DNA of 64,000 nt from Saccostrea cucullata (Eukaryota). Location of the stretch: contig NW_026930981.1 of the NCBI RefSeq assembly GCF_032062105.1, positions 186,001 to 250,000 of the forward strand, written 5' to 3'. A model generated the notes under the pieces. It was not told where the DNA came from. It ran no database searches and worked only from the letters and a program-made list of their open reading frames with translations. A program made the translations under genes and the position numbers. Positions 137-33,012 of the stretch are shown in pieces (position 1 is the stretch's first letter; each line of letters starts with the position of its first letter).

Positions 137-305
137 CTATGATGTACTGGGTGCCGGCGATGGTGGTGGTGAAGGCCCGCCTCTTGTATCGCGGGGAGCA
201 GGGGTGGGACTGGGACCCCCGGAGATCAGGTACCTCATCCCCCGCCTTCAACGTCTCTGACTCCGTTACCGTGACAACAGGGATACTGTTCAGTGACACA
301 CTCAT
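137..305 (-). CDS. PDE1: Probable alternative first coding exon of PDE1 (MSVSLNSIP...KRRAFTTTIAGTQYII|G); an in-frame upstream ATG is also available at 341
   Basis: ATG at 305, 56 codons + 1 nt, then donor ATAG|GTAAG at 136. Same phase and same terminal motif as the exons at 18926 and 32886. Confidence 0.6.
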
Positions 306-3300
306 TCCTGTTTTTAAGTTTCGGTTTTCTTTGTTTTGCATATTTTATAGGTATATTCCATTTAACAAAAATACCTTTGCCATCATCACTGGTTTTTGAT
401 GAAAGTGCTAGGGTCGATACGGTTCACCAAAGATCTCCCACACAAGATTCAGAAAGAGACCCTGTTATCCTATTATTTTTGTAAAAGCTTTGACGGTTGA
501 TAATTCTGAGCACTGCCAGCTACCAGATCATAAATTCTGATTGGCACCAAGTGTTTAAAGTTCCATCAGGCTGCGTCTTGTCTCTGGTAGAGGGGGCAGA
601 TCAGAATCAGAGGGAAGGCTTTAGCAGCCACCGGAGACGTGAGAGAACATGACAGGGGGGATACACTAGGCACCACCAGACAACCCCCACTGTCTACAGC
701 CGTTAGTGTATAACAGGTAACAACGGCTCAGGTGCAGTCACTCGACTGTGTCTTCTCCTGCAGGTTGTACTGGCACTGAATTCTCATTAATCCACAATAG
801 TAAATAACACAGCCGAGCTTTGTTTGTTCACTCTATCACATATAGGTCCCTTACGTATTCAATTAATACAAGTGCAGCAAAATGGAATATTTTTCCATTT
901 GTTATAGTCAGGAAGTGAGACCATTTTGTAGGTATGATCCCATTAAATATTGATGATTGTAAACTCTGTCTGTCGACCAGAGGTCTTATGTCATTAATGG
1001 CTCAACAGATTATTACATCTGACAACATAGGTAGAGATCAGGATCCGAGAGTCTAGGTATCCTCAGGTATATCAACACTTATCTCTCAGCATCCAGAGTG
1101 TACACACTAAAATGTCTACCTTCCTTAATAAGACACGACTCTACACCAACAGTTTGCATTCTTTTTGTCAGTGGATACACATTGATCTGTTGAATACTAA
1201 TAACGGTTTTGCACGACAAACTAAACCTTTTCCAATATCAAATTGTCATAAATATATCCTTTTTCAAATTTACCCACCATTCTCATTAAACGGAACAAGG
1301 TCTCTGTACGGAGTTTATCAGAATATTGTGGCTTTTGACGATGGAGAGTTGGCGATTCCTTGACAACCATGAAGAGTCCAGTCCACCAAAAAACTTAACT
1401 CAATCTCTACGAGTCCGCACATAAATTTGTATGTCTTTATTACCAATTAATTAAATTTGAGTTCAGAACAGGATGTCATTAATGCAGTGACAAAAAATTC
1501 ACCTCAAAAGATAAACTCCGAAGACAAACGTCATCAAAGACGCTTCCCGAAGGACTCCAAACCCATTTGTCAGTCAACGATCTCGGAAGCTCACACGAGA
1601 TACTACTGTAAGTTATATGGATATAACTCAGGGAATTCAGCCAAGAAATATAATTAGGTCTATAATGTCTTATATGTATCTTTGACATTTCTTAGATAAA
1701 ATATACTCACTATATCTAATTAAGCTTAAAGGTCTAAGCCCTAGTTTTACGTACAATTAAGAAATTAAATTATTTATTTTTCCCTCATCCATTTAATCTA
1801 ATTAGTGCAACTAATTGTAGAACAATAAAATATTGATTATTAACAACTCCATTCTCCAAAAAAGGTAAATGTTGAGGACTTGTCTGATTACAATGAGAAG
1901 AAGTTTCTATTGTGTACCTACCTGGGTCAGATATCAACTCCGGGATCGGAATATTTACAGTTGATCCGGAGGTTAGGAAATCTCTAATAGCCTGTACGCT
2001 TCTGAACTGTTTATCTTCTCTCTCTAATGTAACTTTACTTCAATGCTATCTGTATTCAGCACTTTTGAGAACATTGTGTATAGAACTTAGATAATGTTTT
2101 TATACCTGTAAAGTTTGCTATTGCAAAACAATAATCAATTTGAATTCCAAACTTTTTAATTTACATCTATAATGTACCATACCTTGTCCTAAACCTGACA
2201 TTGCCTTTTTGTCTCTCATTGTTTTTTGGAGAAAGAACTATCTGAATAATGCTTTTGCAATATAATAATCTCTGAGTTTGTTTATAAAAAAAGATCTTTG
2301 TGAATTATATCTAATAAAAAGTTTCCTGATTTTTATTTTTTTTTAATTTTAGACTTATAGAGACAAAATATGAAATAGAATAATCAAATCAACACATTTA
2401 CATGAATTAGTCAAAACGTTATTTTCTTTTAGAAGTCGGTGTCTATAATAATGATAAATTTTAACAACTAACGACTATACAACTAATGAATGTAGATTCC
2501 TTTATAAAGTGACAACTGAAAGATACCTTGACAACCTTTAAGGTACAGGTCTCAAAAAACATCCAAACAGCCAATAGAAGATAATTTATAGTGATGACTT
2601 AATGATTAGTTCTCTTTCTCATTTGATGGATGGAGGAGGATAGGGGCATACAATTGACCACAGTTCAGGGCCTCGGTCCAATTATACACAGCAATGTGAA
2701 CAATTCAAATCAGAAGAAAAGTACAGGCAGGAAGGGAAGAAATGATGTGTATCTTAATCAGGGGAGATTACAAAGGTACAAAGTAAAGAATTGCGTTCAG
2801 CATTAAAAATGATAATTTGCAGCCCAAGTCATTTATCAGAGATAAAACTAAATAATGATGAATGAAACAGTAAAAGAATCCAGATTTTTAAATAGATACA
2901 AGGACAATGACTTATTGTGAACCTTGACCTTGAATGAAACTGATGGTTGATATTGAACAAGATATCGAAATAATTCAGAGTTTGATTAAAATCTGCTCGT
3001 CTTTGGCCTTAAGTCAATGATCTAGGAAACATAAAATATGCTGGATATAAACGTTTATTTTATCCTGGTGGTCCGATTATGTAAGACCTGATCGAAGGTC
3101 AAGTTCTCCAGAGTAAATAACGATTAGCTCTACCAGTGTATACTAAAATCAGCTAAAACTAATTTACTAATATAAGCTATAACCGCAGGTTTTAAGAGCA
3201 GGTTTTATAAAGATACTGTGAATCAAACTTTGCAATAGCGGAAGCTCATATCAGACCGACATCATATTATGAAGTTACCATACAAGCATTATCTTATTCC

Positions 3301-4432
3301 TAAACTGCATGACAAAAAACAACTGAATTTTTTTCTCACAAAAATATTTACATTGCATCATCCTAGATAATGTTGGTTAGTATAGAAATAAAGTGCTTAA
3401 AAATTAATACTTATATGAGTTGGTTTACATGCATGGCAGAAGTTAAATTTGGTCAAAGAGTATATAAATGTATAATACACATCACCAAGAATTAAATAGC
3501 CAGAAAAAAAAACAAGACAGTAATATATATAAATCAATCGTTTCAGTATTTACTAGAGACGTATTCATGATCATACATGCAGATATATTTACCAGATTAT
3601 GAACTTTCCTGTCATTAATGTTTAAGTGTAAAAACACAATGCTTAAAGTCAAATTTTTCTCTGAAATAAATTTTTACAGAGTGAAGTAGCTTGTAATCTG
3701 AAGTGGTTCAATCCCTCGACAGAACCTGTGAACAGTTTCAAGTAGATATGTCACACGGGTCATACATCTACACTGCTGGCACAAGGGAGACAACTTTCTC
3801 TCAAGCAATGCACCAATCTAAGTCTGTTTAAACTCATTTATTATATGATTTTTTTTTTGTATTAAGGTAAATGGCTAGAACTCTGGAAAAATCTAGGTCA
3901 TAATGTATATTTTTTAAGGGAATTACATACGTACTTCATAGATGGCCACAAATTCAAAAAAAAGATTTTTACCAAACATATTATTTAATACGTATTGTGA
4001 TCAGCGAATCATGACGATATAATTTGTTATTGAACACTTCAAACAAAACCAAAGAATTACAAACATAATTTGTATCAATGATGAAAATATAATTAAAATT
4101 AAGTACATGGCACAATGACATTTGTAAACGTAATCGTTTTAAATAAAAAAATTCCCTGTGATATCATTTTCTAATACATCCTTTACAAAACTAGAATAGT
4201 TTCCTAATCAAGCCATTTATTTTTGGCCTAAAATTATGATGTAACTATAATGGTGCATTATTACATATTGTGAAACTATGAAGTTGAATTTTTTTTGTGA
4301 CTATTTCAGTTATCTTTCTTTGATCACTTTTGCTAGGAAGCATCTGTATTATAGAAATTAAAAATATCAATAAATTCTTTTTACTTTGTAATTTGTTCCC
4401 AAATACCAAAGTCCAAAAAGCATGCTCCTTAA

Positions 4433-31430: not shown

Positions 31431-32885
31431 ATAAAAAATCTTGAAGAATGTGTATTAATTTAATATGAATCTATGAAGAGAGAGAAGCAGGTCAACAAGA
31501 TTTCTTGTACATGTTACAGATTACGTCCAAACTTTCTCTCAACTTCTTCTTTCGAGCTCATTACTGGAAATCAAACCCCTTCTCCATCAAAATCTGACAT
31601 TTACGAGCCACAGTCATTTCAATTTCAATTTGATCCAGCAGGTTTGGGTTTGGATCAGTTTCCATCCGCAAGGAAGGAGAAATCATTACCTGACGACAGG
31701 AACAAGAAAGCTCCAAGGGTGATTAATTCTTACATTTACCTGTTACATAATTCTGTGTTTGCTGTCATTGGCTTATTATTGAATTATACGAGCTATTACA
31801 CTAGTTAGAGACCATTAATAACGAAGCTGCAGCCACTAATTACTACATAAGGTAACATGATGATAAAACACTAGGCCCGTCTCCGTATCCAGGTAAATTA
31901 TTACGGGAACTCGGTCTACAATAATAAAACTGTCTCCAATTTCCAATAGAGACATTATATATGCTTCTTCTATAACATCTTTTAATCATGTGAAATCCTT
32001 TAATTTATACAAGAATTTCCCTATTTACTCTAAAATTGGATTCTCTTTCTGACTACAAAGTTTCTGCATGATGTGTTTAAACACAAATTTTATTTTTCAT
32101 GAAGGACATATGTCCTTTGTGCATTAAACTTTAATTTTCCAATCAACTCCAAGGAAAAAATGACACTATATGCCTGCAGAAAAACAATTCATAACCTTGC
32201 TCAAAAGTTAATCAGGACTGAAAATACAATAATTCCTATTTCACACGTGTTGGGTTTCTGTCAAAACGGATCTGGTAAACAAATCTCTTTTCTTTTTCTC
32301 TGTGCAGCTTTCACACTTGGTTTCTTGACTATTCACACATCCTGCCTATTATCTTTTTTTTTCAGTGGTTCCATAGAATGTTTTCTAGTTTTGTTTATTG
32401 CCAATAACAATTTTTTTTAATGCATTATCCATGTGATGTGTTAAAAACCTTACCAAAAAAAAAAGAAGCAATAACGTCAAAACAAGGCAGCTATATGGTC
32501 AGTGACATTTTATCTCATTAGAGTCCAATCATGACAGGTGCACAATCATTGTATAATACATGAAATGTTTCTAATGATGCGGAGAAGGGAGTTCCGCATA
32601 TTTTTAAGACTCATTCATTCAAATTCTTTGATTTCCTTAGGCTGCAGAACACAATTTATTTTTTAAATTTTAATTAAAAATTTATTTACACTTGAATAGA
32701 ATAAAGAATTTCTTCAATATAATAATTCTTTTGAAAGGATTGAAGAGAACTGTCAGATTTTTATTTGACAGAAATGATTAAAAATTTGCTGATAAATTCA
32801 TTAATCCTGTGAACTGACAAGCCTGCTGAGCGTATCATTTAAATGTCTTCTCTATAGAGCCCCCGTATCTTATCTATACACTTAC

Positions 32886-33012
32886 CTATGGTGTATGCCG
32901 TGCCATCGAGGGTGAACGTCGCACTCTTGCACTTCTTGAAGATTTTGGGTGTGATGGGGCGGGGTCTCTTCGCCTGATCCAGTTTGTCCCGATCCTCTTC
33001 TCTGCCATCCAT
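32886..33012 (-). CDS. PDE1: Alternative first coding exon of PDE1 (MDGREEDRDKLDQAKRPRPITPKIFKKCKSATFTLDGTAYTI|)
   Basis: AAAATGG start; 42 codons + 1 nt; donor ATAG|GTAAGT. FKKCKSATFTLDGTAYTI closely matches the N-terminal peptide I recall for a long vertebrate PDE1C isoform (FKKCRSATFSIDGYSFTI). This frame is not in the ORF track. Confidence 0.75.

What the first reader, a model, noticed from the sequence alone, without database searches (positions are those of the whole stretch)
137..33012. Array of alternative first exons sharing a terminal [IL]xGxxY[TI]I motif (variable N-termini for PDE1)
Seen: three separate ATG-initiated exons over 33 kb (33012-32886, 19280-18926, 305-137) have unrelated bodies of 42, 118 and 56 aa. 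All end the same way: KKCKSATFTLDGTAYTI, RAKCVVRLEGAKYTI, KRRAFTTTIAGTQYII, each followed by G|GTAAG in phase 1. Recalled: the first matches the N-terminus of a long vertebrate PDE1C isoform. Inference: a variable-first-exon/constant-body system, as in UGT1 or clustered protocadherins. Each promoter would supply its own targeting or phosphorylation region plus a conserved beta-hairpin-like peptide that must sit next to the constant exon. I know of no description of this repeated motif as a module.
Basis: partly seen in the sequence, partly recalled or inferred. Interest (0 to 1): 0.8.

Follow-up and report, generated by a model that had tools for sequence, protein, structure and literature searches.

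The report
Alternative first exons of oyster PDE1
Three exons in this window, plus a fourth just outside it, are alternative opening exons of an oyster calmodulin-dependent phosphodiesterase (PDE1) gene; each ends in its own version of a small beta-hairpin conserved from molluscs and insects to mammals, and although automated annotation already lists the isoforms, I found no description of the hairpin itself.

Summary
Three ATG-initiated minus-strand exons (33012-32886, 19280-18926, 341/305-137) each end in xGxxYxI plus G|GTAAG. A single PDE1 gene lies downstream on the same strand, and its 66-nt exon 2 (55 kb left of the window) begins TG-GCT-AAC, so every junction reads Y-x-I-V-A-N-P-P-D. 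RefSeq models on this same contig already join each exon to that body.

The motif is longer than reported. AlphaFold predicts a 6+2+6 beta-hairpin (pLDDT about 60) whose last residue, Val, is made by the split codon. A fourth leader (type D, ...VVIVFPNGEIVE|VANPPD) lies outside the window, and some isoforms have no hairpin.

Each type is an old lineage. Types A and B occur in molluscs and insects, in the same genomic order in one insect. The hairpin lies upstream of the regulatory segment shown in human PDE1B to suffice for Ca2+/calmodulin control, so an isoform-specific docking or targeting role is most likely, but that is inferred.

The arrangement is a known kind and is already annotated. 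The conserved swappable hairpin appears undescribed.

The parts
32886..33012 (-). Alternative first coding exon, type A (42 codons plus the first base of the split Val codon). It is followed by the donor G|GTAAGT at 32885.
   Evidence: Sequence. 100% match to the N-terminus of RefSeq protein P0174 on this contig. Orthologous leaders in oysters, abalone, an insect, Drosophila and vertebrate PDE1C. AlphaFold hairpin at residues 30-35 and 38-43.
18926..19280 (-). Alternative first coding exon, type B (118 codons plus 1 base). Donor G|GTAAGT at 18925.
   Evidence: Sequence. 100% match to P0160 and four sister RefSeq isoforms. Type B leaders in gastropods, insects, an aphid and a mite. Three RNA-seq reads lie inside the exon and none in the adjacent intron (weak).
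137..341 (-). Donor G|GTAAGA at 136.
   Evidence: Sequence. 100% match to P0177. Type C leaders in oysters, abalone and freshwater mussel. AlphaFold hairpin at residues 56-61 and 64-69.

Best explanation
The window holds the 5' part of the single PDE1 (Ca2+/calmodulin-dependent cyclic-nucleotide phosphodiesterase) gene of an oyster. At least four alternative coding leader exons are each spliced, one per transcript, to the same 66-nt exon 2. On contig C13118, minus strand, they are:
- A: 219012-218886
- B: 205280-204926
- C: 186341-186137
- D: 149962-149668 (outside the window)
- exon 2: 130949-130884

Each leader is a mostly disordered peptide of 42 to 118 residues that ends in strand 1, the turn and most of strand 2 of a two-stranded beta-hairpin. 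The split codon (G from the leader, TG from exon 2) gives the last strand residue, Val, and exon 2 continues A-N-P-P-D. The products share one regulatory and catalytic body but carry different hairpins.

The hairpin types are ancient paralogous lineages: A is found in vertebrates, insects and molluscs, B in arthropods and molluscs, and C and D in molluscs, with a D-like leader in a rotifer.

Shown: the exon anatomy, splice phases, joined isoforms, cross-phylum conservation and the predicted hairpin. Inferred: that each exon has its own promoter. Also inferred: that the hairpin is an isoform-specific docking or targeting element acting outside the core autoinhibition/calmodulin switch. I put that functional step at about 0.4.
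For: - PDE1 domains lie downstream on the same strand.
- The full exon chain was mapped by tblastn with consistent phases.
- All four donors are G|GTAAG.
- Nine RefSeq isoforms on a contig of identical length use leaders A, B, C and D, or none, and match the DNA at 100%.
- Logan contigs of 2.4-3.4 kb encode 626-704 aa of types A-D, so they are spliced mRNAs in close relatives.
- The same order, A then B then exon 2, with the same phase, is seen in an insect locus.
- Drosophila suzukii has both A and B isoforms.
- 29 of 119 vertebrate PDE1C representatives have the type A leader.
- Within-type identity across phyla (A 0.67, B 0.42) exceeds A-versus-B identity within one species (0.24-0.29).
- AlphaFold gives the same 6+2+6 hairpin for the A and C isoforms.
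- Human PDE1B truncated to residue 82 keeps Ca2+/calmodulin regulation, and PDE1 dimerization does not need the regulatory domain (PMC12610503).
Against: - I obtained no junction-spanning reads or transcription start data for this species. Only 5 reads were laid.
- The RefSeq XP models are automated predictions.
- Hairpin confidence is modest (pLDDT 55-60), and the tool gives no contact map, so no docking partner is identified.
- Isoforms without any hairpin exist (M|ANPPD and short leaders), so the hairpin is not needed for a PDE1 product.
- Type D has different spacing (Gly at -5 instead of -6), so its homology to A-C is uncertain.
Confidence: 0.8

Rival explanations
1. The leaders are mutually exclusive internal cassette exons behind one or a few shared non-coding first exons. 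Choice would then be made by splicing rather than by alternative promoters.
For: No transcription start data were obtained. Two RefSeq mRNAs encode the same exon A protein (XP_062568702 and XP_062568703), which implies 5' UTR variation upstream of a leader.
Against: Each leader opens with its own ATG, and the leaders are 14-37 kb apart. In the insect locus, and in vertebrate proteins, the type A leader begins the called protein. Alternative 5' exons with their own promoters are the norm for PDE genes (PMC13095499).
Confidence: 0.15
2. The hairpin is an intramolecular regulator. It would dock on the catalytic or inhibitory/calmodulin-binding region and tune basal activity or calmodulin sensitivity, so the alternative leaders set different Ca2+ thresholds rather than locations.
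For: Mammalian PDE1 N-terminal variants are known to differ in calmodulin sensitivity (own knowledge; Yan et al. 1996, listed). The hairpin is tethered about 70 residues upstream of the well-predicted regulatory helices.
Against: [quoted passage not shown] AlphaFold models the hairpin at only pLDDT of about 60 between disordered flanks, which gives no sign of confident docking.
Confidence: 0.25
3. The shared tail reflects convergence on a structure required next to exon 2, not common descent of the leader exons by tandem duplication.
For: The exon bodies are unrelated. Type D has a different turn and register. A-versus-B identity over 17 residues is only 0.24-0.29.
Against: A and B share a basic-Cys prefix, the same strand lengths, a [DE]G turn, Tyr at -3, an identical intron phase and the same GGTAAG donor. 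Both already coexist in insects and molluscs.
Confidence: 0.2
4. The three sites are chance ORF fragments or unused pseudo-exons.
For: None beyond the thin RNA coverage.
Against: Only these three of 17 loose motif sites have the GGTAAG donor. Each is conserved across phyla and is present in spliced transcripts of relatives.
Confidence: 0.01

Closest known systems
Long N-terminal isoform of vertebrate PDE1C (leader MTDASNRKEGFKKCRSATFSIDGYSFTI joined to VANEAGDK...)
   Same: It is orthologous to exon A. 15 of 22 residues are identical over the hairpin plus VAN, and the junction is at the same Val. A snake gene model that reads through the donor (...TIGEHFG) points to the same G|GT phase. The downstream order is also the same: a basic-Ser stretch, then LPxxD[ST]PEA, then the regulatory helices.
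   Different: In my sample vertebrates show only type A plus motif-less leaders at this junction. No B, C or D was seen. Exon 2 reads VANE[AT]G rather than VANPPD, and vertebrates also have leaders that join further downstream (MESPTKE... and others).
N-terminal splice variants of mammalian PDE1A, PDE1B and PDE1C, and the unique N-terminal exons of PDE4 isoforms
   Same: One catalytic and regulatory body combined with alternative 5' exons that give isoform-specific N-termini. In PDE2 and PDE4 such N-termini direct location (PMC13095499).
   Different: Those leaders are not reported to share a repeated structural element. Here at least three, and probably four, leaders end in paralogous versions of one hairpin that is completed by the constant exon.
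Variable-first-exon arrays (UGT1A, clustered protocadherins); comparison from own knowledge
   Same: A tandem series of alternative 5' coding exons, each joined to a common set of constant exons, with partial similarity among the variable exons.
   Different: There are only about four to six leaders. They encode short, mostly disordered peptides plus a 14-residue hairpin, not a whole domain. Similarity is confined to the last 17 or so codons. Promoter-per-exon was not shown here.
RefSeq gene models of this locus (XP_062568693 to XP_062568704)
   Same: They contain exactly the exon A, B, C and D junctions to exon 2 inferred here.
   Different: They are automated predictions with a generic name (PDE 1A-like). 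Nothing in them marks the hairpin or its recurrence.

Membership tests
PDE1 (Ca2+/calmodulin-dependent phosphodiesterase) gene | PDE1-specific N-terminal regulatory domain (Pfam PF08499) downstream on the same strand | tested here: met
   C13118:102383-102565, minus strand, 109.7 bits, E 7e-29. The exon reads RLTDEDDELSEVEPDAVPTEVRDWL....
PDE1 (Ca2+/calmodulin-dependent phosphodiesterase) gene | PDEase_I catalytic domain (PF00233) in downstream exons | tested here: met
   Four exon hits at C13118:92996-101239, minus strand. The whole chain aligns to PDE1 homologues down to about 90645.
PDE1 (Ca2+/calmodulin-dependent phosphodiesterase) gene | The window exons are joined in frame to that body | tested here: met
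   The phases fit. RefSeq isoforms P0174, P0160 and P0177 on the same contig carry each leader followed by VANPPD and match the DNA at 100%.
PDE1 (Ca2+/calmodulin-dependent phosphodiesterase) gene | Junction-spanning RNA reads in this species | tested here: inconclusive
   Only 5 reads were laid on the 1.8 kb around exon B. Three fall inside the exon, none in the intron and none across the donor. Spliced mRNA contigs of all four types exist in close relatives.
Variable-first-exon / constant-body array | Several alternative 5' coding exons use one common acceptor | tested here: met
   Leaders A, B, C and D, and a leaderless form, all continue with the same exon 2. The single acceptor is at C13118:130949.
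Variable-first-exon / constant-body array | Each variable exon has its own promoter or transcription start | not testable with these tools
   No CAGE or 5' end data were available, and the promoter scanner covers only bacterial sigma-70 sites. Coverage was too thin.
Variable-first-exon / constant-body array | The variable exons are paralogous | tested here: inconclusive
   Only the last 17 or so codons are alike (A versus B identity 0.24-0.29, with a shared KC prefix, [DE]G turn, Tyr and donor). The exon bodies are unrelated.
Conserved N-terminal beta-hairpin of PDE1 (proposed here) | A two-stranded hairpin predicted at the motif in different leader types | tested here: met
   Exon A isoform: E30-35 and E38-43. 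Exon C isoform: E56-61 and E64-69. pLDDT is 55-60 and the flanks are below 40. Types B and D were not folded.
Conserved N-terminal beta-hairpin of PDE1 (proposed here) | Conservation beyond molluscs | tested here: met
   Type A is present in an insect, Drosophila and vertebrates. Type B is present in insects, an aphid and a mite.
Conserved N-terminal beta-hairpin of PDE1 (proposed here) | Known Pfam domain, or occurrence in other protein families | tested here: not met
   Pfam has no family on the N-terminal parts at E up to 10. All 45 word-search hits to the leader plus exon 2 are PDE1 proteins.

The most novel reading that the evidence does not exclude
The hairpin is a bilaterian-wide, exchangeable address or docking cassette. 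Each ancient version (A, B, C, D) would bind a different partner or membrane site by beta-strand pairing. In types A and B this could be modulated at the adjacent basic-Cys and Ser/Thr residues (KKC[KR]SAT). Promoter choice would then place the same Ca2+-gated PDE1 enzyme in different compartments. This would include the long human PDE1C isoform, whose N-terminus I found nowhere characterised.
Probability: 0.3. Interest if true: 0.6.

Novelty: new member of a known kind. Interest (0 to 1): 0.42.

Why it matters
PDE1 links Ca2+ and cyclic-nucleotide signalling and is a drug target. [quoted passage not shown] A 14-residue hairpin upstream of that segment has been kept for more than half a billion years. 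It exists in up to four parallel versions that are swapped by exon choice. Such an element is a strong candidate for isoform-specific location or partner binding. It is directly testable in oysters, flies and mammalian cells, because the type A version is shared with vertebrate PDE1C.

Tried and rejected
- **BTB/T1 idea.** My first thought was that xGxxYxI is the first strand of a BTB/T1 domain, as in potassium-channel or KCTD genes. I rejected it because none of 138 PF02214 hits in the genome lies on this contig and PDE1 does.
- **Exon 2 search.** I looked for exon 2 with a W..L[RK] pattern copied from vertebrate PDE1 and found only false candidates. tblastn with homologues solved it.
- **Vertebrate match, first attempt.** A word search with the exon A isoform found molluscs only. 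This was misleading because isoforms hide behind 90% cluster representatives. Searching vertebrate PDE1C by its constant region resolved it.
- **Cluster look-up** of the few vertebrate representatives in the HMMER list was uninformative.
- **Pfam** on the N-terminal parts gave nothing credible.
- **RNA reads** were too sparse to show junctions.
- **Earlier findings of the scan:** none for this place.
- **Six literature searches** found no description of the motif.
- **Not done:** I did not build or search a joined spliced model of my own. Exons were handled by reference, and joined sequences were used only as database proteins returned by the tools.
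Full report
**Observation.**
- Exon A (33012-32886) encodes 42 residues ending KKCKSATFTLDGTAYTI.
- Exon B (19280-18926) encodes 118 residues ending RAKCVVRLEGAKYTI.
- Exon C (305-137) encodes 56 residues ending KRRAFTTTIAGTQYII.

Each is followed by one extra G and a GTAAG donor. Exon C's frame is open to an earlier ATG at 341. On 170 kb of minus strand, a loose version of the motif occurs 17 times in three frames. 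Only these three sites carry the GGTAAG donor, so chance is excluded.

**Where the exons lead.** The window is G000:C13118:186001-250000. The genome holds one PDE1 locus plus an apparently duplicated copy on a short contig. The PDE1-specific domain PF08499 is at C13118:102383-102565, and PDEase_I exons lie at 92996-101239, all on the minus strand. I first suspected a BTB/T1 domain, but no BTB hit lies on this contig.

An exhaustive HMMER search with the PF08499 exon returned full-length PDE1 proteins. Seven of them carry [KR][KR]CV[LV]xLDGxxYxIVA[NS]PP[ED] ahead of the regulatory region. tblastn with these proteins mapped the whole gene:
- constant exon 2 at 130949-130884
- exon 3 at 113273-113091
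- exon 4 at 112922-112809
- the PF08499 exon, followed by catalytic exons down to about 90645

Exon 2 has a long pyrimidine tract and a TAG acceptor, and starts TG GCT AAC CCC CCA GAC. With the G left by any leader, the junction reads Y-x-I-V-A-N-P-P-D, as in the homologues. The phases of the following introns also fit. The introns from exons A, B and C to exon 2 are about 88, 74 and 55 kb.

**Already annotated.** A word search and cluster look-up found nine RefSeq proteins (XP_062568693 to XP_062568704) on a contig of exactly 445,888 bases, the length of C13118. Their N-termini match the contig at 100%.
- P0174 uses exon A.
- P0160 and four others use exon B.
- P0177 uses exon C, starting from the ATG at 341.
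- P0179 uses a fourth leader at 149962-149668, outside the window, ending KVVIVFPNGEIVE (type D).
- P0175 begins M|ANPPD. Its start codon is probably assembled from a non-coding first exon ending in A plus the TG of exon 2.

All four coding leaders end G|GTAAG. My own RNA check was thin. In two oligo-dT runs of the same species label, only five reads fell on 1.8 kb around exon B. Three were inside the exon, none in the intron below the donor and none across it. Better transcript evidence comes from relatives. Logan contigs of 2.4-3.4 kb encode 626-704 residues of types A, B, C and D, and these can only be spliced mRNAs. I built no joined model of my own.

**Conservation.** The same four leader types recur in annotated isoforms of oysters, abalone, a whelk and freshwater mussels, alongside short leaders without the motif.

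Outside molluscs:
- An insect-like species (assembly GCA_947086385.1, closest to fly and aphid PDE1) has a type A leader (FFKKCKSATFQIDGATYTI) and a type B leader (RKCVLTLDGYSYVI).
- In that species' locus they lie in the order A, B, exon 2, at 10001, 35036 and 57198, with phase-1 donors.
- Drosophila suzukii isoforms X9 and X1 are type A and type B.
- A mite has type B plus a motif-less leader.
- A rotifer has a D-like leader.

The first word search found no vertebrate match to exon A, but isoforms are hidden behind cluster representatives there. Searching vertebrate PDE1C by its constant regulatory region gave 119 representatives. Of these, 61 contain VANE[AT]G. 29 of those 61 begin with a leader of the form MTDASNRKEGFKKCRSATFSIDGYSFTI, found in mammals, birds and reptiles. 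The others have motif-less leaders joined at the same Val.

Over the last 17 leader residues, identity within a type across phyla is 0.67 for A and 0.42 for B. A versus B within one species is 0.24-0.29. The types are therefore separate lineages older than the protostome radiation, and type A is older than the bilaterian split.

**Structure.** AlphaFold, run on 41- and 42-sequence alignments, predicts the same hairpin in two leader types:
- Exon A isoform: SATFTL (30-35), a DG turn, TAYTIV (38-43).
- Exon C isoform: AFTTTI (56-61), an AG turn, TQYIIV (64-69).

In both, pLDDT is 55-60, the flanks are below 40, and the regulatory helices and catalytic domain are confident. The last strand residue is the Val made across the splice junction. 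Pfam has no family for this region, and every word-search hit to leader plus exon 2 is a PDE1.

**Function.** Nielsen et al. 2025 (PMC12610503) show that human PDE1B truncated to residue 82 keeps Ca2+/calmodulin regulation. [quoted passage not shown] The hairpin therefore lies outside the core switch.

Each type has kept its own side chains for hundreds of millions of years while differing from its neighbours. That argues for type-specific binding rather than a generic spacer. My preferred reading, at about 0.4, is an isoform-specific docking or targeting element. Intramolecular tuning of calmodulin sensitivity is the main rival. Own promoters for each leader are inferred, not shown.

**Verdict.** The arrangement is a further example of alternative 5' exons in a PDE gene and is already present in automated annotation. 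What I did not find described is the recurrent, deeply conserved hairpin split by the leader/exon 2 intron. It is of moderate interest.

Noticed in passing
window 9127-13365 (-): An uninterrupted 1,412-aa ORF with an integrase core followed by RVT_2. It is a Ty1/copia-type retrotransposon polyprotein sitting in the PDE1 intron between exons B and C. Observed only.
   Followed up: partly
window 14265-15122 and 15709-16567; 55476-60055; 50463-52030: Large tandem arrays: two near-identical blocks of a 147-bp unit (5.9 copies each), several blocks of a 156-bp unit, and a 34/102-bp array of about 46 copies. They are probably satellite or transposon-associated repeats in the introns and upstream region.
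   Followed up: no
G000:C17052:1631-4252 (-): A second PF08499 hit with the same score as the C13118 exon, plus PDEase_I exon hits, on another contig. It is probably a haplotig or assembly duplicate of the PDE1 body.
   Followed up: no
G000:C13118:149668-149962 (-), about 36 kb left of the window: A fourth hairpin leader (type D, 98 codons, ending KVVIVFPNGEIVE, then G|GTAAGC), used by RefSeq P0179. Its turn is PNGE and the Gly sits one residue closer to the junction than in types A-C.
   Followed up: yes
G000:C13118:130884-130949 (-) and P0175: A leaderless isoform starts M|ANPPD. The ATG is probably made across the splice junction, from a first exon ending in A plus the TG of exon 2. The same form is annotated in Crassostrea virginica (P0196).
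   Followed up: partly
G000:C13118:113091-113273 (-), exon 3: Two more conserved elements lie between the hairpin and the regulatory helices. One is SLTVL[KR]RTNS[KR] in protostomes, a basophilic-kinase-like L-x-R-x-x-S site. The other is LPxxD[TS]PEA, shared by molluscs, insects and vertebrate long PDE1C. AlphaFold predicts both as disordered.
   Followed up: no
L028:38975-49619 (-): In the insect PDE1 locus, four alpha-amylase genes are nested on the opposite strand in the intron between the type B leader and exon 2.
   Followed up: no
window 19520-19763: One RNA-seq read pair lies 240-480 bases upstream of exon B's ATG. It could be a long 5' UTR of exon B or unrelated transcription. Coverage is too thin to tell.
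   Followed up: no
P0411 (snake PDE1C model): This gene model reads ...YSFTIGEHFG|VANETGDK. It apparently runs past the normal donor into the intron. This incidentally shows that the vertebrate intron follows the same I + G|GT position.
   Followed up: no
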